A stretch of DNA of 63,144 nucleotides, counting the filler, from Octopus bimaculoides (taxonomy: Eukaryota), in NCBI RefSeq assembly GCF_001194135.2. It is 9 parts of 9 records of this genome, joined end to end, with 100 filler letters (N's around TTAATTAATTAA, not from the genome) between each part and the next. Parts side by side here need not be neighbours in the genome. Positions count along the whole stretch, not along the records: positions 1 to 11,928 come from NC_068986.1; 8 more parts are not named here. One strand, 5' to 3'. The notes beneath the pieces are model-generated. The model had not been told where the DNA came from. It did not search any database and was given only the letters and a program-made list of their open reading frames with translations. Made by a program: the position numbers and the translations under genes. Shown here in pieces: positions 1 to 11,843 of the stretch. How positions within the stretch are numbered: the stretch's first letter is position 1; every line of letters begins with the position of its first letter.

Positions 1-16
1 TATATATATATATATA

Positions 17-224
17 GTTTTAGGGAAAATAACCAATTCTCAAGAACTCATCGATGAAAATCCACTATCACATATAGAAAAATTAATAATTAAAAGCACA
101 ATAAATGAGTATAATATAAAGTAAAGTAAATATCATAAGATAAATATAATATAATATAATATAATATATGTGATAGTGGATTTTCATCGATGAGTTCTTG
201 AGAATTGGTTATTTTCCCTAAAAC
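17..224. repeat. Perfect 60 bp inverted repeat with an 88 bp AT-rich spacer, embedded in (TA)n; MITE/foldback-like
   Basis: 17-76 is the exact reverse complement of 165-224. Confidence 0.9.
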
Positions 225-284
<60 letters not shown>

Positions 285-296
285 AATATATATACG

Positions 297-449
297 ACGA
301 GTTTGTTTCAGTTTCCGCCTACCAAATGTACTCAGAAGGCTTTGGTCGAACCGAGGCTATAGTAGAAGACACTTACCCAAGATGGTACGCAATGGATGTG
401 AACCCGTCACCATGGTGTTGGAAATCTAGCTTCCTACTACACAGTCACT
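297..449 (-). mobile_element. tRNA-derived SINE (family A), 5' part
   Basis: Reverse complement of the head seen at 7456-7610. Confidence 0.8.
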
Positions 450-633: not shown

Positions 634-820
634 GTCAACTATTTTGACAGAGATATAGAAAACGCACCAACCTACTTCCAGTCATTCTTTGGTCAAATGT
701 CTTCTGCGTTGATTATTGGTTTAAAGCCAAATGGTTACTATTGGATGACAGTGCAAGTGTTCAATACAGCAGGACTTAGCGATCTGAGTGAGAAGTATTT
801 GGGTAAAACAGGAAGTGATC
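634..820 (+). CDS. Contactin-like cell adhesion molecule, internal exon (second half of an FN3 domain)
   Basis: Acceptor ttgcag| at 633 and donor |gtaagt at 821. The 187 nt exon (phase 0 to phase 1) reads VNYFDRDIENAPTYFQSFFGQMSSALIIGLKPNGYYWMTVQVFNTAGLSDLSEKYLGKTGSD. The GLKP..Y...VQVFNTAG pattern is typical of FN3 domains. It splices in frame to 3775. Confidence 0.85.
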
Positions 821-1020
821 GTAAGTATTTTTTATAATCTATATTCATTTATAATACATATTTATAATTCACAAATGCATTATTCGTTCAAATTAGTTCT
901 GGCAGAATAGTTCTGGACTGAAGAAATTATACTTGTTAAATTATGTGCAAATATATTTAAAATCTGGGCCAAAGGTTTTATATTTGGGACAGATAATGTT
1001 AGCTTTCTAGTAATGTTATA

Positions 1021-1244
1021 CGAGGGGGAGGTGAGGCTGAAAACTTTCTGGCTTTGAGTAAAAAGAAAATACAGGAGGATCAGTTATTTATGTTTTTACT
1101 CAACATGTTCCCCTCTCAGATTCACACACTTATTGCAGCTGTCCTCCAGCTTTTCTAAGCCCTGTAAAAGAACTCAGTAGGTTGGGCCTCCAACCAGGCC
1201 TTTCACAATACCCTTAAAGCCAGGAACTTTTCAGCACCCCCTCA
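1021..1244. mobile_element. Mariner-type MITE
   Basis: TA-flanked. The left end CGAGGGGGAGGTGAGGCTGAAAACTTTCTGGCTTT and the right end AAAGCCAGGAACTTTTCAGCACCCCCTCA form imperfect TIRs. Confidence 0.75.
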
Positions 1245-2419
1245 TATGAACAGACAGATGTCGGTCGTAAGTGAACCGCAGTCAAGGGCAAACTGCGGTT
1301 TGGGGGACTATCTGAATGGTACGCCTTGAAAATTTTAGTAATGCGACCTGCCTGATGATGAGTCACATCTTATGCAGCTCACTTCTCAATAAAGGCTACC
1401 TATGCAGAAAATTCTCCGGTATAATGTAGGATAAAAAGAAAGAAATAATGATTGTAGTTTTATTACACCAACATCTGGAAATAGCCTTGTTGTGCAACTG
1501 GCATTTATAGTTAAATTTTCTTTCTTTTTCTTTTTAGCGTGGGATTTGCCTTTTAGAATAGACTATAATTATATTATTGTTCTCTGTTGTTGAATCTGTG
1601 TTGGTGGTTATCGTAACCCATTGCTGACTGAATATTTTGAACGACAGAGGAATCAGTTGGAAATGAGTTTGTCTTTAATGATGCAGATAGTGAGTGTATG
1701 AAATGGAGTCAGATGACATAACGCAATCGTTGACCTACAAAACGCCTATTTATTTCACGTGCTAACGCATAAAATAATATAGTCATTTCTATATTTATTA
1801 CTTTGTGAAAGTTTCAGTTTGTGCGTTTGATCTTTGAGAAGCAAATGAATCAAGCTTGATACTGATTTTGTTGCAAACGTTAGTATGTTTCACTACCTTG
1901 GTGGAAATGAAAAACAATTATTTACATAACATTAACTTCACGTTGTAGTCTGTTAATAGTTTAAAATGCGTTTGGAGTAGACTTTAAATGTATTTAGTAG
2001 TAAATAAGTTAACAGTGTGTAATTAATTAGCCAGTTAATTCATTTATTTTTCTCTTAAATACCTGAGAAACATGCTTTTCTGGTTTTTCATTATTGCTAG
2101 TGTATTTTTGTTTTTTATATTTTTCACAATGGATGCTATGAGTAGTGCCGCAAACTGGTGGACTGTTAGTTATGCATTGAACTGTTATTAGTGGTTTAAG
2201 TAACCATCTATAAATCAAGTCCTTTGCCAAACAAGTATAACAGTCATTGTATTTATTTATTTATTTTGCTGGAATTGTTTCTAGCAACATGCATTTATTA
2301 ATACGTAGTTAATAAGTAGTTAAATGTTTAATACTAAGTTGGCTAGCTACGTATGAACTTTGAAAGATAACGAAACACCGCATGTGATTAAATGGAATGT
2401 AATTGCGAAATTCATAACT

Positions 2420-2860
2420 TACGTGAATAGATCGAATAAATGTAGACTTTTGTTTGGATGAAAGAGCGCAGACCCTGTTCAGATCTAAGATTCCTAACTC
2501 TATATTGAACTCCAGATCAGAAATTTTCAAGGGTTGAATACATATGTATAAATATATTTTGAAGAATTGGAAAATTCCGCTTATTCCTGTCTGACTTGAT
2601 ATCTTTCCAGCCTTATCATTTAAGGTCTAAGGAGGATAATGCTTCTACAATTTTACTTTTTACATTTTAGTTTCTGTTTTTCGTGCTCCGTTTTTCGTTT
2701 TCCGTTGTTTACTGTCTGCATTTTCTATATGCTGCCTTCTCAATTTTTTTGCATTTCTTCTATAATTCAATTTTTTTAGTTCGTTATAAGTGGCTAGCGC
2801 CTGAAGAATATGCCTGAGTTTTCTCAACATATGAAACTATTAGTAGCGCTTTAAATAAAT
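2420..2860 (+). mobile_element. Penelope-like element 3' end (GIY-YIG C-terminus plus pseudo-LTR)
   Basis: With one frameshift and one stop it reads CRLCLDERAQTLFRSKIPNSILNSRSEIFKG*IHMYKY, matching the CxLCxxE...LNxRxE..C.H tail of Penelope endonucleases. A T-rich UTR and a hammerhead follow. Confidence 0.65.
2796..2850 (+). ncRNA. Type I minimal hammerhead ribozyme, intact core
   Basis: AGCGC (stem I) - CTGAAGA - ATATG cc TGAG tttt CTCA a CATAT (stem II) - GAAA - C tatta G - TA - GCGCT (stem I). The predicted GUA cleavage site follows 2845. It lies downstream of a Penelope GIY-YIG C-terminal remnant. Confidence 0.85.
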
Positions 2861-3774
2861 ATATATATAAATAAATAATATATATATCACATGTGTTTAC
2901 ATGATTATGGGATGCTGTTACACATTGCTAGTGACATTTGGTTTCCAGTTCTTTCTTGCTTGCGCCATACTTTTTCATCCTGCCTAAATATCTTTAAGAA
3001 AATCGTCTTCCTGTCATCATTGTGGCCTTTCAAATTCTGTTATTTATCTCTTGCATACGACTTAGAAGATCCACTGGTCCATCTGATTTCTGTAAAGCTT
3101 GCGACATGTCCAGCCCAGAGCTACTTGTGCTTTCGGTATCCCGCCTTCGCATCTCTTATTTTGTTTGTTTTTATATCACCTTATTTTGGATATGCTTTTG
3201 CAATGATATTACCTGTATGGATCTTTCCATGGCTCTTTGTGTCGTAGCTAAACTATAGTCTCTCTCGATAGTAACCCGCAACTCACTTTCCGCATGAGAT
3301 ATGAATGTAAGAAACACTTCGAAAGAAAGAAATACATGCTAAACGAATTGGTGGAAATGTCGCGAGATAATTTAAGATTATACAATTATTTTTCAGTATA
3401 TTATTTAAAAACTTCTCTGGTATTAAATGTACGAAATAATATATTCTTTTAATCATTGGAGAAGTATAATCGCATTAATTTTTCATTTACTGCCTTATTG
3501 TACTCATTTAGAAATATAATCCGTTTTACGTATTATATTTCTGAAATCTCATTGCAATGTCTAGAAGTTTGGCTTTCGTTGCGAATATAATTTACACTGA
3601 ATGCATCCAGGTAAGTTATTCAATGAGTTTCAGAGTAAAACATACAACCAGATAGAAATACGATATTGTAACTTACTTCAAAATAATGACTACTTATGAA
3701 ATGTGATATTAGATGCAACTTAACAAATTTGAATAACTAGCTAGTAAAATACAGCTTTGATGTTACTTTAACAG

Positions 3775-3890
3775 CTCCTTTAAAATACCCGATCGAAATA
3801 CACGTTTATTCTCACGGTCCGGAAAGTGTTCGAGTTACCTTCCGTGGAGTTGGCTACAACAACAACGAAGATCCAATCCAAGGGTACAAG
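3775..3890 (+). CDS. Contactin-like cell adhesion molecule, next internal exon (start of the following FN3 domain)
   Basis: Acceptor tttaacag| at 3774 and donor |gtaaga at 3891. The 116 nt exon gives (P)PLKYPIEIHVYSHGPESVRVTFRGVGYNNNEDPIQGYK when joined to the phase-1 end of 634-820. It resembles the last FN3 repeat of invertebrate contactins; the family assignment is from recalled motifs. Confidence 0.85.
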
Positions 3891-6800
3891 GTAAGAGATT
3901 TAATTTATAATACTTTTTAGTGTTTAGTTAGAGGATGTAAGGCAGTACTTTGACTCTACCAGGCCTGTGTGACTGCTTTGAGATCGTGGACTTAACCTAA
4001 ATGCTTGCAACGGAATGTACTATGCTAAAACCAACCGATGATCAGGTGAGCATATTAAACCGGGAAACGAGTTAAGACTACAACGTTTGCCTATTTATCG
4101 AAAATAGTACTTGAAAGTCCGCTAATCTGAAATTCTTTGAAATTAGAAAACATGCAAAGTGATTATATTACCAACATAAACATCTTTCTTCCTTGTTATA
4201 TACAAAGTACATCTTATAACAGTTCAAATCCATCTTTATTCGTGGTACTTTTACATTTCATGCAAAACAAAATACGCGGTAACAAAAAAAGTAACCTTCT
4301 CATTTCAGCTTTCCGGCTAATGAATATGTCTAATGTTATTCGAAAAGTACTTACTAGTAAACATTGCAAGTTTCCTATAGAACAAGTAATCTCTAGAAAT
4401 GAAACTTTCGAGATAAAAGAAATACGCATTTTAAATAAAAGCACACTGTATTTCCATAATATGTATACACGAAGATAAAGAAATATGGGTCATCAAAATA
4501 AACAGCATTATGCAGCAAACAAAAATGTGAAGCCATACAGGAAATAACAGAATTTTGCTGGTTCGTACTTTCTGTAAACTGACTAGCTAAGACATTATAA
4601 TGCCGAATTGGGGAATTCGAAAGAATATATAGATTATTATAAGCAAAAACAAATGAGAGAGAAAACATTGCATGAAGTAAGCAAAGAAAAATTACGAATG
4701 AGAATTCCTAATAAGCAAACAAGTTGCGATAGATCTTGACTGACCCACGTATCAAAAACGTACGTGATTATGTCGGTAAGTGTTGTATAGCTGATCTTTC
4801 ACCTTTCTTCGTCGAGAAATCTACATTTGGTGTTGTGTATGTCACTGAGAGTGTCAACACTAAACTTACTTCCCAATAAGATAATCGGTTGTCAACGGTC
4901 TGAGGATAAATTCCTACTGTTATCTCGGTAAAGTGAATTTGAATCTTGCTAAAACGAAACCATCAATGACCTCACTTCTGTCTGCATGACTGTCATAAAT
5001 ATTATCATCAACCCAAATTTATCGCAATGTTATTAGTATTATTATGATCATCACTTACTTCATTATCATCCCGTCACAAATTACGTATATAAATCTACAT
5101 TTACATTTTCATTTCTGCAAACGGTATCATTTGCTAATTTGTTTAATTCTAGCCAATTTATCAATACAATGACGTTATTCTATCAAATTATCTGTATCTA
5201 CTATGAATAATTAAAATCACTTATGGTTAAGTTTCGAGATAATATCTTTAAGATACTAATTTTAATGAACCAGTTAACATTGGAATTGACATAATTTCGA
5301 AATAATTTGCGTGTACTGTATAGTAAAATTCCTATTTTATTTAACAAATAGTTTAATATCTGTGTTTAAATTCTGAATGAGACAAAACACTCGCAACATA
5401 ATATATAACAAGAATGATTTATTTTACAAACAATTTTCATATCGAGCAGCTAGGTTTGATATACTCCAAATTTGTCATATTATGAATTTAAATGGCGATA
5501 GTGATAGGATTGATTAAGTATATGAAGAAATGCCAAAGGCAAATTAGTTTCTTCCATGTAAACTTTGAGTTAAAATCTTACCGCAATTTGTTTTATATCT
5601 CATCTGTATCAAATCAATAAATAAGCACAACCAAAGTGATGTTCATTCAATCAGCTATAATTCTCTTCCTGCTCGCTGATATAGTTGTAACCAAACCAAG
5701 AAAAATTAATTACCAAAACATAAAATACAATTGATTTATTTTTTTATTGAAAATTTTCTTTTCATAAATTACATTTGGTTTTAACAACATCAGTACTTTA
5801 AAATTCTGTTTGTTATTGTGCCTTTTCATTTGTTTGTTTGCTATTTTTAAATTTGATTTTAAATTGATATGTAACTATATTTGAAAGCCATCATTATTTT
5901 TTAGTTTTTGTAATCCTGAAGATTGTTTAGTGTTTAATACTTAGTAACATTGTAGCCAGAAGTTCAAGGTACTTTGAATATTTTAAAACTACATTCGGGC
6001 GAAATGCAAAGTTTGGAATACACAACTTTATTACAAATTTGTGCTTGGTTTATTTAGAAATCAAGACGCATATATTGTATTTTGATTAAATCACTGAACC
6101 TACAGAAAATTTAAGGAAGCATTTCTCCAGGGAAAATTCTGTAAAATTTTACGCAATACAAATGAAAATTGTTAACAACTTGATTGAATCGACAAAAATA
6201 CATAATCTCAAACCATATTCGAAGATAATTTGAACAGTAGATGGAATATACGTTGAATAATATAGTATAAACATATAAATAGGACACCTTTTGCTAGTCA
6301 CGTCATAAAACACTTTAAACGAAATGACATCAACAAATTACTATTTCAAAATTCTGAAAGTAGAAATACTAATACTAGGAATTGGAAAAATCAATATTAA
6401 TTTCATNNNNNNNNNNNNNNNNNNNNNNNNNNNNNNNNNNNNNNNNNNNNNNNNNNNNNNNNNNNNNNNNNNNNNNNNNNNNNNNNNNNNNNNNNNNNNN
6501 NNNNNNNNNNNNNNNNNNNNNNNNNNNNNNNNNNNNNNNNNNNNNNNNNNNNNNNNNNNNNNNNNNNNNNNNNNNNNNATGCATGTGTACATGTATGCAT
6601 GTATATATGTATGTACGTGTGTATGTAATATTTTTACTGAAAGATTTTTGTAGTAAAGGAAACAGCGAAAAGACTATATACCATACTACTACATTCATGA
6701 GGTAGTAAGAACATTCATCACTAAAATAATCAGCACATATGAAATGAAGAAGTTTAAATCTTGAAGTGACATATTATTGTATATGCGGCTTCTCTACCTC

Positions 6801-7140
6801 ATTTTATTTATTATAAGTATTAAGTGCATTGGTTGCACTAGGCACAACTGTTCCGCTGCTAAGTACAGGGAAGTGAGAGGCTTTTGCGCTAATACCTTTC
6901 CGTTCGTGATACTTTTGCGCTAATACCATTCCGTAAGCGAATTAAAATTGTAGTGTCTCATTGGAGTCACTATTATTTACTTATTGCTTATATTTAGCAA
7001 TATATATAACGAGATAGATAAATAGACAGACAAGGAGAAAGATAGATATTCCTTATTAACTCCTGTATATATACATACGCGCACGCACCCATGTTTAGTA
7101 TTAATTAACAGTAGATGGATTTCGTATTAGTCTTTTATTA

Positions 7141-7187
7141 GGTACAACAAGTATTTCGACCCATCAGTCTGGGTCTCTTTAGGTACA
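7141..7187 (-). ncRNA. Hammerhead ribozyme motif, G5 mutated (left arm of foldback)
   Basis: On the minus strand: TGTAC - CTAAAGA - GACCC agactgat GGGTC (perfect stem II) - GAAA - TACTTG - TT - GTAC. Confidence 0.55.
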
Positions 7188-7365
7188 TTGATAAAGAAGT
7201 TTTACTGATTATGTCATTTTATCTAAACTGGAACGCAAATTTCCACGTTCATATTTGAACTTTCTTGCGTTTCTATAATATTATTTGTTTTTATTCCTTA
7301 CCTAACTTTATGGGCATATAACAAGCCAGTCGACTGAAAAATCTCTAGTGAGATTCCTTTATCAA

Positions 7366-7411
7366 TGTACCTGAAGAGACCCATACTGATAGGATGAAAT
7401 ATACGTTGTCC
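7366..7411 (+). ncRNA. Hammerhead ribozyme motif, stem II decayed (right arm of foldback)
   Basis: TGTAC - CTGAAGA - GACCC atactgat AGGAT - GAAA - TATACG - TT - GTCC. The core boxes are intact but stem II is broken. Confidence 0.55.
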
Positions 7412-7455
7412 CTAATAAAAGTGTAATACGAAATCTGTCTCCTACTATTAATTAA

Positions 7456-7656
7456 TAGGAGTGACTGTGTGGTAAGTAGCTTGCTTACCAGCCACATGGT
7501 TCCGGGTTCAGTTCCACTGCGTGGCAGCTTGGGCAAGTGTCTTCTACTATAGCCTCGGACCGAGCAAAGCCTTGTGAGTGGATTTGGTAGACGGAAACTG
7601 AAAGAAGCCCGTCGTATATATGTATATATATATATGTGTGTATGTGTGTGTGTGTG

Positions 7657-7689
<33 letters not shown>

Positions 7690-7835
7690 TTGTGTGTCTG
7701 TGCTTGTCCCCCACCATCGCTTGACAACCGATGCTGGTGTGTTTACGTCCCCGTAACCTAGCGGTTCAGCAAAAAGAGACCGATAGAATAAGTACTAGGC
7801 TTCCAAAGAATAAGTCCTGGGGTCGATTTTCTCCG
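7456..7835 (+). mobile_element. tRNA-derived SINE (family A), near full length, with internal (TA)n(TG)n
   Basis: A-box-like TGTGTGGTAAG and B-box-like GGTTCAGTTCC, conserved GGGCAAGTGTCTTCTACTATAGCC, and tail GATAGAATAAGTACTAGGC. Confidence 0.85.
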
Positions 7836-8019
7836 AAACAACTCTGAATACATGAGCGCCCAACATATACATAGCTCGAATATCGAACCCCATACTTTAG
7901 GTCATAACAAAAACCCAACTAATCTCACTAACACTAATCAGAATACTACTACCACTATTACAGATAGGATAAATAACAACAACGATAGAAATAGTCATAA
8001 TACTAGTAATAATAATGTA

Positions 8020-8470
8020 TTACCTCCTCCAGTCCTGAGAATAATCACCTCAATGCACTACCGTATAACTGTCAACCTAGGACCATCTGCCCTCCACAAA
8101 CCCGATGCACAAGGTCTTACGTAATCTATACATGCACCGTTCTCAAAACGTTACACAATTCTACAACCATATATAGGGTCAACTATAAATTTTAAACAGC
8201 GATACGCTGCGCATCTAAATTCTTTTAGATACGAGAAACAGTAAATCCACAGCACTCGCCAGTCACATACATCATCTCAAAAATTGAAATATTCTATACA
8301 TCTTTTCATGGTCCCTAATAGATTCAAGGCTTTCATACGAAGGTCAACGTTCAGCCTGCAAGCTATGCATAAAAGAGGCATTCCACATATTAAAACACAA
8401 CTCTTCAATACATAAGTATAATGAGGCCCGAGGTATATGCAACCACCGCTTTTTTCATACCTTCAAATTT
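8020..8470 (+). mobile_element. Penelope-like GIY-YIG endonuclease remnant
   Basis: Degenerate translation contains PYIGSTINFKQRYAAHLNSFRYEK, then STALASHIHHLK and CKLCIKEAFHIL, with frameshifts and stops. UTR-like sequence probably continues to about 9700. Confidence 0.7.
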
Positions 8471-8684
8471 TATCACATATCTAAATGCAACCTAAATCAC
8501 CACACCATACATATCCCAAACACTCCTTAGGCAATCCCAAGCAACCCTACTTCACTTTCCATTGTCTCCGTTTTTAATCTTTTAATATCCGAATCTTATT
8601 TTCTAATTATTTTTAATTGTTCAATAATACATATATGCACATGTATATATGTATTCGTGCATGCGTATGGATGTGTGTGTGTGT

Positions 8685-8771
<87 letters not shown>

Positions 8772-9229
8772 CACACACACATACACACTCATATATATAT
8801 ATGCATATACGCGTATGGGTTTAAGTACATAAGTATGCGGGCCTATATAATAGTGCATATACACACGTATACAAATGTGTGTGCGCGCATTCGTATATCA
8901 ATATACACTTATTTCTTTCTGTCTCTGATTCCTCAGCCCCTTCTATCACATTAAGCAGTACAACAAACACCTCTGTCTATTTTTAGAAACTTGACCATTA
9001 TATCCTATTATTCTTCCCTTCCTTTTTGAGGTTTACTACCCATTTTAATATCCCACCGCCGGTAACATTTTATATACCTATGTCTCCACTTTAGTGTCTT
9101 TCAAACATATCACACCACCTCCCACTCCTCATATTCATTCCTTACATTTTTATCTCTTCTTACCCCCCTACTTTTCTCCCATCCTCCTCATAATATCTTG
9201 ATCAACACTCATTTTTCATTTTCACTTCC

Positions 9230-9261
<32 letters not shown>

Positions 9262-9603
9262 TCCTCACCTATTCCTTTTGACCATTCTCCTCATCTTTTC
9301 TCTCCTCTCAATCTACTTAATACTACCACTACATTCTCAAAATTTCATTCACATCACAAGACCCCTTTGAACGGACAACACATGGAGTCTACGTCTCCAC
9401 ATTGGACAAGAAACATTTCTACCACTTCTCCACACCACTTTACTTGGATAAGGGAATTGCAACTATAACATCCTACATATATTTTTTATTTTTACTTTTA
9501 TTCTCTTATTTTCCGTTATACTTCTTATATCCATCCTTTTCCAAAATAACTCCTTATATTAAACTTTACTATTTATCTCTATGTAACCATCCATTTCACA
9601 TCA

Positions 9604-9650
9604 TCTCCAACGAAGGGATATCTCTAATATCCCAGAAACAGGTGTAAGAC
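9604..9650 (+). ncRNA. Decayed hammerhead ribozyme motif downstream of a Penelope remnant
   Basis: TCT - CCAACGA (two core substitutions) - GGGATAT ctcta ATATCCC - GAAA - CAGGTG - TA - AGA. Probably inactive. Confidence 0.4.
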
Positions 9651-9772
9651 TAACTTTCTCGTTATAAATGTCCTGAAAATTCCACACAGTCTTGGCTTTC
9701 TTGCCTCATTTTATTCAACACACACACACACGCACATACACACACACATACATACATACATACATACATACA

Positions 9773-9808
<36 letters not shown>

Positions 9809-10819
9809 TATGTGTATATATTATACATTCTTACTTGGTTTGGTTGATAAAGACGAAATGCAACGACGGGTCAATCAAGTGCTGAATTCAATGCACATAG
9901 ACGCGTTTAAATGTAGAAATGAAACCGATGCACTTCACCTTGTTTCTGTCAAACTACAGATAAAAGCAATACCACAAATTTTATGGGAAATATATAGCTG
10001 ATTGTGTTCTATATTTTTGAGATGAGGAATATCCGTCCAATGTAAATAATGTAAATAACGTATAGCTGATTGTATCGGAATCAGTCTTTAATTGCTATTT
10101 AGGATGAAAAGTAAAGTCTACCTCATAGAATTTGAGCATAACGGAACATAACTATCTACAGAATGGCATGTTTAGAAAGAATAGATTTAATTGTTTTCCA
10201 CTTTAACTGACTTAGAAATAGTTTGCTTTTAGTATAAAAAATTGCTCTGTTGGGTATTGTCACTAAATTAAAATTAGAAATTACATGCAAGTTTCGTATT
10301 ACACCAAAGAGATTAAATAAATGTCCAATGATATTGAATGTCACAACAGATAATTACTTTCAGGGATGTCAAAATAAAGGATATAAATTACAATATTTGA
10401 TCAGTCGTTTCAATTTCAAACATTAACAAAGCTTCTGCCTCCATATCAAACACATTCTAAGTTCAAGGTATTTTAGAATATTGACTTAAAGAATAGATAC
10501 CATATGAAGGTATGCAACAAACATTTTCAGAATGCATCTCTTTATGCAAATTATTATTGACGGTCAAACAGGTTGGAAATTGTATTCACACTGTTTGGCC
10601 AAAAAGGATCCATTTTGTTTTGTTTTCTATTGGAAATGTAGCTAGTTAACGTGTAGATTATATTGAAATTCAAATAGATGTTTGTTACAAACGCTGCAAA
10701 GCTTCCTCCGCATCCACAAGTACTTAATAGCCTTTTCAGGGAACAACATAGTTTAAAATGTTCCATAATGAATCAAGAGCGTTTAGAGCAACTGATTAAG
10801 AAACTGGTTTCCTATTGAA

Positions 10820-11010
10820 AAATTGAGAAATTGCACCAGTTTTTAATTAACTTGTGCTAGAAAATCTAAGTTATTGTTTTTCCAGCCTTATAACTCATGG
10901 TCTAAGGGAGATAACTCTTTTCCTACTTTTATTTCTGATTACATTTTCGTTTTCTGGTTTACAATCCATGGTTTTGTATGTTCTCATCACAAGAAACTAT
11001 TAGTAGCACA
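10820..11010 (+). mobile_element. Degraded copy of the same Penelope pseudo-LTR family as 2580-2850
   Basis: Shares TTTCCAGCCTTAT..T.A.GGTCTAAGG and GAAACTATTAGTAGC with 2605-2630 and 2833-2847. The 5' half of the hammerhead is missing. Confidence 0.5.
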
Positions 11011-11087
11011 TAAAGACATGTATCTCTCACCAAGTGGAATAATTTTTTGTTGATTTTACCATCACGGAACAATACATTATATACATA

Positions 11088-11843
11088 CAGGGGCGGAATG
11101 GATAAATTGGCACCACGTTATATTTTTAAATTCGCCCATGTACATTGTTTTTGATTTAGTAGGGTCAGTTGGGCACCGTCTGTGAGAAAACAGAACTATT
11201 ACGCAATTCAGTCTGCAGAAATTTGGAAACTACAAGCTCCAATACGAACATTCCAGAGTGTTTGAATGTCAAGCTGAGTGTTTGGCGTGTCCCCAAAACA
11301 TGTGCCGAGGGTGGTAAAAATCAAACATCCAGTCACCATCATGGTGATTGAGTGATCACTAGTGATTGCGACGTTATGCCTCTATTCATCCTTCCACATG
11401 GCCTCATACTCAACGCGGAGGCCTACCTCAAGTATCTGGAGGAGTTAGTGCTGCCCTGCGTCAAAAGAATCGCTGCCGGAAGACGCTATATTTGGCAACA
11501 TCTGACAACCTAACTCCCCACTCTGCAACCCGCTTGACTATTGTCTGGTGCACAGATGAGCGAGAGACCAACAAAACTCCTTGTAACACCAAAGATGAAC
11601 TGAAAGCAAAGATTATGGCAGCATTCACCAACTTAAACAAAGAGACCGTCCAGAAGAGATGCAGGAGATTCCAAAGTCGTCTAGAGGACGTGGTTGCAGC
11701 TAATGGCGATTTTATTGACTAAATTTACTCCTTCGTATTTCAAGATATTTTTATGTAACTTTGGTAAATATATCTGTTAAAATGAGATGTCAGTGTTATT
11801 TTCATTTGTGTGTAATTTAGACGACAGTTTATTCACCGCACCT

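What the first reader, a model, noticed from the sequence alone, without database searches (positions are those of the whole stretch)
2796..2850. Intact minimal hammerhead ribozyme in the sense strand of a contactin intron
Seen: all core positions (CUGAAGA, GAAA, GUA), a 5 bp stem I, a 5+4 bp stem II, and a 2 bp stem III with a near-palindromic loop. It lies in the intron 821-3774, in the same orientation as the gene, at the end of a Penelope 3' remnant whose coding part is decayed. Established: Penelope pseudo-LTRs carry minimal type I hammerheads, which cleave weakly as monomers and better as dimers, and intronic hammerheads are known in amniotes. Inference: this copy could cut the contactin pre-mRNA or may have been retained while the flanking ORF decayed.
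Basis: partly seen in the sequence, partly recalled or inferred. Interest (0 to 1): 0.75.

Follow-up and report, generated by a model that had tools for sequence, protein, structure and literature searches.

The report
Minimal hammerhead motif in octopus repeat
A complete but weak-looking hammerhead ribozyme motif sits at the very end of a short non-coding repeat inserted in an intron of an octopus contactin-like gene; it is an ordinary transposon relic, with no evidence that it regulates the gene.

Summary
The motif is real. At 2796-2850(+) there is a 5-bp helix I, CUGAAGA, a 5+4-bp helix II, GAAA, a near-palindromic helix III/loop 3, and GUA with cleavage after 2845. Chance expects 0.0004-0.008 such motifs per window, and none of 23,101 shuffles reproduced all its features.

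The host is an Octopus contactin-like gene: the joined exons are 100/101 identical to the O. vulgaris and O. sinensis proteins. The motif is sense-oriented in intron 821-3774.

The "decayed Penelope ORF" was not found. No RT or GIY-YIG remnant is detectable. The motif instead ends a ~290-nt non-coding repeat (2559-2854). A second copy lies at 10815-11014 with the same boundaries and unrelated flanks, and has lost the 5' half of the ribozyme.

The motif is atypical: A10.1-U11.1 instead of G-C, no bulged nucleotide after A9, and no Rfam hammerhead hit. Folding predicts competing structures for the monomer, while the homodimer minimum-energy structure is exactly a double hammerhead. No second intact copy is nearby.

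Best reading: a retroelement-borne minimal type I hammerhead, probably Penelope- or retrozyme-derived, with negligible effect on the pre-mRNA. It is a new member of a known kind and of low interest. Family consensus and orthologous loci could not be examined.

The parts
2796..2850 (+). Complete minimal type I hammerhead motif. Helix I is 2796-2800/2846-2850. CUGAAGA is 2801-2807. Helix II is 2808-2832 (AUAUG/CAUAU plus UGAG/CUCA, with a UUUU loop). GAAA is 2833-2836. Near-palindromic helix III/loop 3, ACUAUUAGU, is 2836-2844. GUA is 2843-2845, and the predicted scissile bond lies between 2845 and 2846.
2559..2854 (+). Copy A of a short non-coding interspersed repeat (~290 nt) whose last ~55 nt are the hammerhead.
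   Evidence: Homology to copy B is confined to this span. The shared blocks score z=10.3 and 8.6 against shuffles, and the flanks score z~0.
10815..11014 (+). Copy B of the same repeat, in the same orientation and shortened. It keeps GAAACUAUUAGUAGC (15/15 identical) but lacks ~90 nt, including helix I 5' strand, CUGANGA and helix II 5' strand. It is not a ribozyme.
2543..2558 (.). TA-rich low-complexity sequence immediately 5' of copy A (ATATGTATAAATATAT).
   Evidence: read directly from the sequence
2851..2887 (.). (TA)n/(TAAA)n-like tract immediately 3' of copy A. Together with the 5' flank it suggests insertion into a TA-rich microsatellite. TAAATATAT occurs on both sides, but this is weak evidence of a target-site duplication in low-complexity sequence.
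634..820 (+). Upstream exon of the contactin-like gene (FN3 region); donor GT at 821.
3775..3890 (+). Downstream exon of the contactin-like gene; acceptor AG at 3773-3774; phase-1 junction.

Best explanation
The motif is the 3'-terminal hammerhead of a short, non-coding interspersed retroelement copy. The element is most likely a non-autonomous derivative or terminal fragment of the Penelope-like element / retrozyme lineage. It inserted, in sense orientation, into a TA-rich tract in an intron of an Octopus contactin-like gene. In its parent element the hammerhead would process element transcripts, and would be active mainly as a double hammerhead formed by two copies. In this solitary intronic copy the catalytic core happens still to be intact. 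The RNA is predicted to misfold as a monomer, it lacks loop-loop tertiary contacts, and it has no intact partner nearby. It is therefore expected to cleave the contactin pre-mRNA rarely, if at all. Shown here: the motif, its improbability by chance, its place in a repeat with defined ends, the gene and its orientation, and the predicted folds. Inferred: retroelement and Penelope ancestry, dimer-dependent activity, and negligible effect on the host gene.
For: The motif is complete and far above chance. It is part of a repeat: a second copy has the same two boundaries and unrelated flanks. Given the shared 3' half, a matching 5' half (helix I strand, CUGANGA and helix II strand) arising independently is about 1e-7 by my estimate, so the common ancestor of the two copies almost surely carried the whole motif. 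None of 57 random genomic occurrences of the 3'-half string has CUGANGA within 60 nt upstream. Helix I of 5 bp, a long helix II and a palindromic helix III/loop 3 are features reported for Penelope min-hammerheads (PMC4209133). Hammerheads lie near Penelope 3' ends, and (TA)n is a preferred target of some clades (PMC8557442). The homodimer minimum-energy structure is exactly the double hammerhead, at -28.9 versus 2 x -12.3 kcal/mol. Other hammerhead-bearing repeat relics occur in the same window and in a cephalopod-like contig, L003. For the monomer, the hammerhead fold has about 0.1-0.5% Boltzmann weight. The minimum-energy fold pairs core CUGA with loop 3, and in 161 nt of native context the core GAAGAA pairs with an upstream UUCUUC. 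Penelope min-hammerheads show no detectable monomer cleavage in vitro (PMC4209133). No RNA-seq ends were found at the hammerhead site of an Anolis Penelope element (PMC11167929).
Against: Only two copies of the repeat could be examined, and only one has the full motif. No family consensus, covariation or copy number is available. No Penelope RT/EN remnant is adjacent. G10.1-C11.1 is replaced by A-U, and the bulged nucleotide between A9 and 10.1 is absent; both were called highly conserved in Penelope min-hammerheads (PMC4209133). No Rfam hammerhead model scores the motif, while a clean min-hammerhead in L003 scores 30.1 bits. No copies were found in 64 kb of other octopus or cephalopod-like DNA. 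No cleavage data exist.
Confidence: 0.6

Rival explanations
1. Chance look-alike: the repeat belongs to a family unrelated to hammerhead-bearing elements, and the motif is a fortuitous match with no ribozyme history.
For: A10.1-U11.1 and the missing bulge are atypical for the family. No Rfam model scores the motif. The sequence is AT-rich. Copy B has no functional motif. With the lax descriptor, about 0.008 motifs per 12 kb implies over a thousand chance hits in a ~2.7-Gb genome (the genome size is from my own knowledge).
Against: With the motif's actual features (helices I and II >=5 bp and a palindromic helix III), 0 of 23,101 shuffles match. The palindromic helix III and the exact double-hammerhead dimer fold were not part of the search criteria. 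The position at the extreme 3' end of a repeat next to TA-rich sequence fits known hammerhead-bearing elements.
Confidence: 0.15
2. Still-competent element ribozyme: copy A belongs to an undescribed octopus family of short hammerhead-carrying non-autonomous retroelements. These would be analogous to schistosome Sm-alpha SINE-like elements or solo retrozyme monomers. The atypical hammerhead would be catalytically active, as a dimer or with cofactors, in the element's own life cycle.
For: The unit is short with defined ends. The core is intact. The dimer fold is correct. Animal retrozymes are reported to derive from Penelope pseudo-LTRs and also occur as solo monomers (bioRxiv 10.64898/2026.07.22.740005). 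Hammerheads without the canonical tertiary contacts are active in mussel retrozymes (PMC7229834).
Against: There is no tandem arrangement here. Only two copies were seen, at 76% identity and one of them broken, which suggests an old and decaying family. No copies occur in 64 kb of other cephalopod DNA.
Confidence: 0.17
3. Exapted intronic ribozyme: the sense-strand hammerhead cleaves contactin pre-mRNA and modulates its processing, like the conserved intronic hammerheads of amniotes.
For: The motif is sense-oriented within an intron and has an intact core. There is precedent in amniotes (cited in PMC7229834).
Against: The motif lacks the stable helix III and loop-loop contacts of the amniote intronic ribozymes. 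There is no HH9/HH10 hit. The monomer is predicted to misfold, both alone and in context. Retrozymes are reported to be depleted from introns, suggesting that intragenic copies are selected against rather than co-opted (bioRxiv 10.64898/2026.07.22.740005). No conservation data are available.
Confidence: 0.04

Closest known systems
Minimal type I hammerheads of Penelope-like elements (Cervera & De la Pena 2014, PMC4209133; Lunse et al. 2017 as cited in PMC6765202)
   Same: Type I topology; short helix I (5 bp); long helix II; very short helix III with a palindromic loop that favours a double hammerhead; occurs as a dispersed single motif; lies at an element's 3' end next to TA-rich sequence.
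   Different: A10.1-U11.1 instead of the highly conserved G10.1-C11.1. No unpaired nucleotide between A9 and 10.1. Helix II is interrupted by an internal loop. No RT/GIY-YIG ORF or pseudo-LTR pair is nearby.
Non-LTR retrozymes of animals (PMC7229834; bioRxiv 10.64898/2026.07.22.740005)
   Same: A non-coding, AT-rich unit of a few hundred nt carrying one type I hammerhead. Solo monomers are known. They are thought to derive from Penelope pseudo-LTRs.
   Different: Retrozymes are defined by tandem repeats with a hammerhead in each unit. Here there is a single unit, plus a broken copy 8 kb away. Retrozymes are reported to be depleted from introns.
Schistosome Sm-alpha / Sj-alpha SINE-like elements with hammerheads (cited in PMC6765202)
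   Same: A short interspersed non-autonomous element that carries a hammerhead.
   Different: No pol III promoter or tRNA-like part was found (ARAGORN found none). There is no sequence similarity. Activity is unknown.
Conserved intronic hammerheads of amniotes (Rfam HH9/HH10; De la Pena & Garcia-Robles 2010, cited in PMC7229834)
   Same: Sense-strand hammerhead within an intron of a protein-coding gene.
   Different: The amniote ribozymes are ultraconserved, have stable helices and tertiary contacts, and are efficient as monomers. This motif is minimal and repeat-borne, gets no HH9/HH10 score, and its conservation is untested.

Membership tests
Hammerhead ribozyme, type I (core definition) | Core CUGANGA ... 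GAAA, A15.1-U16.1, and H17 not G | tested here: met
   CUGAAGA 2801-2807, GAAA 2833-2836, A2836-U2844, A2845
Hammerhead ribozyme, type I (core definition) | Three helices around the core, with helix I open | tested here: met
   Helix I 5 bp, helix II 5+4 bp, helix III 2-3 bp
Hammerhead ribozyme, type I (core definition) | Match to Rfam covariance models (Hammerhead_1, _3, _II, HH9, HH10) | tested here: not met
   No hammerhead hit at E<=10 on 2700-2950. A control min-hammerhead in L003 scores 30.1 bits, against a gathering score of 34.
Hammerhead ribozyme, type I (core definition) | Site-specific self-cleavage | not testable with these tools
   Needs in vitro transcription or RNA-end mapping
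Penelope-like-element min-hammerhead (PMC4209133) | Short helix I (4-5 bp) and enlarged helix II | tested here: met
   5 bp, and 9 bp interrupted by an internal loop
Penelope-like-element min-hammerhead (PMC4209133) | [quoted passage not shown] | tested here: not met
   A2808 pairs with U2832; treating it as a bulge leaves a U-U mismatch
Penelope-like-element min-hammerhead (PMC4209133) | G10.1-C11.1 base pair | tested here: not met
   A2808-U2832
Penelope-like-element min-hammerhead (PMC4209133) | Palindromic 15.2-16.2 and loop 3 (dimer-capable) | tested here: met
   ACUAUUAGU is self-complementary except for its centre, and the dimer minimum-energy structure is a double hammerhead
Penelope-like-element min-hammerhead (PMC4209133) | Located in a pseudo-LTR flanking an RT-GIY-YIG ORF, or demonstrably derived from one | tested here: not met
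   No Pfam RT/GIY-YIG hit in the + frames of 821-3774 at E<=1. The unit is ~290 nt with defined ends. Derivation from a full element elsewhere in the genome could not be tested.
Penelope-like-element min-hammerhead (PMC4209133) | Member of a multi-copy consensus family with compensatory changes | tested here: inconclusive
   Only two copies were reachable, and the second lacks the 5' half
Non-LTR retrozyme | Tandem repeats, each unit with a type I hammerhead | tested here: not met
   Copy A is single. The only other copy lies 8.2 kb away and is broken.
Contactin gene (host) | Exons identical to annotated contactin-like proteins that have several Ig domains followed by fn3 domains | tested here: met
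   100/101 identity to O. vulgaris CAI9724527.1 and O. sinensis XP_029638021.1. Pfam finds several Ig domains followed by fn3 domains in P0013. P0019, a 62%-identical relative, also has an N-terminal C-type lectin domain.

The most novel reading that the evidence does not exclude
Copy A represents an undescribed cephalopod family of ~200-300-nt non-autonomous retroelements that end in an atypical minimal hammerhead (A10.1-U11.1, no bulge, interrupted helix II). The ribozyme would be catalytically competent as a dimer. Intragenic sense copies such as this one would then occasionally cut host pre-mRNAs, here that of a neuronal adhesion gene.
Probability: 0.1. Interest if true: 0.45.

Novelty: new member of a known kind. 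Interest (0 to 1): 0.2.

Why it matters
Minimal hammerheads carried by Penelope-like elements and retrozymes are already known to occur by the thousands in many animal genomes, so one more copy changes little. The modest value lies in two points. First, I found no published description of hammerhead-bearing repeats in octopus. Second, this one departs from the family consensus at 10.1-11.1 and sits at the end of a very short element. If the family proved large and active, it would add a cephalopod case to the link between retrozymes and Penelope-like elements. For the contactin gene, nothing suggests a regulatory role.

Tried and rejected
- **Rfam.** Searches of the whole window and of a 251-nt slice gave no hammerhead at the site. 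The many mir-297/mir-466 hits elsewhere are microsatellite artefacts.
- **Pfam.** The three + frames of the intron gave nothing.
- **First protein search.** The joined exons found nothing. HMMER against representatives later found the contactin-like orthologue. I had also first mis-set the exon junction (A instead of P) and corrected it.
- **Six-frame translation of both repeat copies as a protein query.** This aimed to find ORFs called over other copies and found none.
- **Exact look-ups.** 17 window or guessed ORFs were not in the collection.
- **DNA pattern scans.**
  - Viral contigs: none.
  - JGI metagenomes: none, then one unrelated GC-rich hit, L005.
  - Prokaryote genomes: 57 random hits to the 3'-half string, none with CUGANGA upstream.
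- **Orthologous intron.** The gene spans ~198 kb in both O. vulgaris and O. sinensis, so no DNA was returned.
- **Other cephalopod DNA.** 64 kb fetched through a mariner relic (L001-L004) holds no copy of the repeat by blastn or nhmmer.
- **L004 GIY-YIG remnant.** It was too decayed to serve as a cephalopod Penelope reference, and no hammerhead was found next to it.
- **tRNA-derived SINE.** ARAGORN finds no tRNA-like part.
- **Lunse et al. 2017.** The paper is not held.

Full report
**Observation**

The 55 nt at 2796-2850(+) read AGCGC CUGAAGA AUAUG-CC-UGAG-UUUU-CUCA-A-CAUAU GAAA C-UAUUA-G U A GCGCU. This satisfies every core requirement of a type I hammerhead:
- CUGANGA, GAAA, A15.1-U16.1 and H17=A;
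- a 5-bp helix I;
- a 5+4-bp helix II closed by UUUU;
- a 2-3-bp helix III.

The scissile bond would lie between 2845 and 2846. My own descriptor scan finds this motif and no other in the window on either strand.

In 23,101 dinucleotide-preserving shuffles, the expected number of motifs per window (both strands) is:
- 0.0078 with the lax descriptor;
- 0.0028 with helix I >=5 bp;
- 0.00039 with helices I and II both >=5 bp;
- zero when helix III/loop 3 must also be self-complementary, as it is here.

One caveat applies. No Rfam hammerhead model reports it, even at E<=10 on a 251-nt slice. A clean min-hammerhead in a cephalopod-like contig, tested as a calibration, scores 30.1 bits with Hammerhead_1.

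**Gene context**

Exons 634-820 and 3775-3890 have canonical splice sites and a phase-1 junction. Joined, they are 100/101 identical to contactin-like proteins of Octopus vulgaris (CAI9724527.1, residues 876-976) and O. sinensis (XP_029638021.1). The O. vulgaris protein has several Ig domains followed by fn3 domains. A more distant relative, P0019, adds the N-terminal C-type lectin domain typical of invertebrate contactins (the lectin point is from my own knowledge).

Other repeats in the window match O. vulgaris DNA at up to 91%. The window therefore comes from an Octopus species. The gene is contactin-like, the intron is 821-3774, and the motif is in the sense strand.

**What the motif belongs to**

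Pfam detects no reverse transcriptase or GIY-YIG domain in the + frames of the intron.

The motif is instead the last ~55 nt of a short non-coding repeat. A second copy lies at 10815-11014 on the same strand:
- Its 5' block is 76% identical to copy A.
- Its 3' block includes a perfectly conserved GAAACUAUUAGUAGC.
- Global alignments against shuffles give z=10.3 and 8.6 for the shared blocks.
- The 100-200 nt upstream and the 100 nt downstream of the unit give z~0.

Both ends of the unit thus coincide in the two copies. This argues for a ~200-300-nt element, not two randomly 5'-truncated long elements.

Copy B lacks ~90 nt, including the helix I 5' strand, CUGANGA and the helix II 5' strand. 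Its differences from copy A in the retained 3' half all fall in helix strands. It is not a ribozyme.

Given the shared 3' half, a matching 5' half arising independently in copy A is about 1e-7 by my estimate. None of 57 random prokaryotic occurrences of the 3'-half string has CUGANGA upstream. The common ancestor therefore very probably carried the whole motif.

Copy A is flanked on both sides by TA-rich low-complexity sequence. This fits the (TA)n target bias reported for some Penelope clades, and hammerheads are described near Penelope 3' ends (PMC8557442).

**Comparison with the known family**

Cervera and De la Pena (PMC4209133) list four features of Penelope min-hammerheads that lay outside their search descriptor:
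- consensus families with covariation;
- an unpaired nucleotide between 9 and 10.1;
- a highly conserved G10.1-C11.1 pair;
- a palindromic 15.2-16.2 and loop 3.

Here the palindrome is present (ACUAUUAGU). The short helix I and long helix II also fit. However, 10.1-11.1 is A-U, there is no bulge, and the family test is inconclusive with only two copies. The element is not a retrozyme in the strict sense, because there is no tandem array.

I therefore file it as working like a retroelement-borne minimal hammerhead. Membership in the Penelope lineage is inferred but not demonstrated.

**Likely behaviour**

- **Monomer alone.** The hammerhead fold (-9.0 to -9.9 kcal/mol) loses to a fold that pairs core CUGA with loop 3 (-12.3 kcal/mol). 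Its Boltzmann weight is about 0.1-0.5%.
- **Monomer in context.** Within 161 nt of native sequence, the core GAAGAA pairs with an upstream UUCUUC, and only the inner helix II hairpin survives.
- **Homodimer.** The minimum-energy structure (-28.9 kcal/mol) is exactly the double hammerhead, with intermolecular helices III and I and unpaired cores.

Published Penelope min-hammerheads show no detectable monomer cleavage and only weak dimer cleavage (PMC4209133; review PMC6765202). No RNA-seq ends were found at the site of an Anolis element (PMC11167929).

The only other copy within reach is broken, and its helix I strand would mispair with copy A. I therefore infer that cleavage of the contactin pre-mRNA is negligible. 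A 2026 preprint reports that retrozymes are depleted from introns. This points to selection against intragenic copies, and against co-option (bioRxiv 10.64898/2026.07.22.740005).

**Limits**

I could not reach other copies of the repeat or the orthologous intron:
- The contactin-like gene spans ~198 kb in both annotated Octopus genomes, so no DNA was returned.
- 64 kb of other cephalopod DNA holds no copy.
- Pattern scans of viral, metagenome and prokaryote collections found nothing related.
- A six-frame protein query failed.

The one comparison available shows the motif lost in copy B.

**Verdict**

This is a genuine, intact-core minimal type I hammerhead at the 3' end of a short repeat in an Octopus contactin-like intron. 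It is most likely a relic of a Penelope- or retrozyme-type element with no role in the host gene (confidence 0.6). It is a new member of a known kind, and interest is low (0.2).

Noticed in passing
window 7080-7220(-) and 7335-7475(+): An inverted pair (84% identical arms, ~140 nt apart) of a different repeat, each arm carrying a type I hammerhead-like motif. The left arm scores 19.4 bits with Rfam Hammerhead_1, but its core reads CUAAAGA (G5 changed to A). The right arm keeps CUGAAGA, but its helix II has decayed. Dual hammerheads on opposite strands a few hundred nt apart are described for Penelope relics (PMC4209133).
   Followed up: partly
L003 4114-4158(-): A clean minimal hammerhead, gcacug-CUGAUGA-gac..guc-GAAA-cagcug-UU-cagugc, with a palindromic helix III. 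It lies in an ENA long-read contig (ERZ21867824) of cephalopod-like DNA and scores 30.1 bits with Hammerhead_1.
   Followed up: partly
window 240-449(+) and 7457-7833(-): Two inverted copies (79% over 210 nt) of a SINE-like repeat next to TA/TG microsatellites. Many copies at 75-91% identity occur in 20 kb of O. vulgaris chromosome OX597814.1 (L001).
   Followed up: partly
window 11078-11878(+): A frameshifted relic of a Tc1/mariner-type transposase. It is 77% identical at protein level to an O. vulgaris 'hypothetical predicted protein' (P0003) and ~84% at DNA level to L001. It lies directly downstream of repeat copy B.
   Followed up: partly
window 1-76 and 165-240: A perfect (100%) 76-nt inverted repeat around an 88-nt AT-rich spacer, bounded by (TA)n. 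It could be a foldback or MITE-like element, or an assembly artefact.
   Followed up: no
window 6407-6578: A run of 172 N (assembly gap) inside the piece. ORFs listed across it are artefacts.
   Followed up: yes
window 8600-8870, 9700-9830, 7600-7710: Long (TG)n/(TA)n/(CATA)n microsatellites produce strong but spurious Rfam hits to mir-297, mir-466 and similar families. All are far below the gathering scores.
   Followed up: yes
window 8000-10000: A strongly C-over-G skewed stretch (GC skew down to -0.69 at 9001-9500) with CT-rich low-complexity repeats. Not examined.
   Followed up: no
L004 13803-14120(-) and 11904-12212(-): A decayed GIY-YIG (Penelope-type endonuclease) remnant and a LINE-type RT fragment in the ERZ21867824 contig. 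No hammerhead was detected next to the endonuclease remnant.
   Followed up: partly
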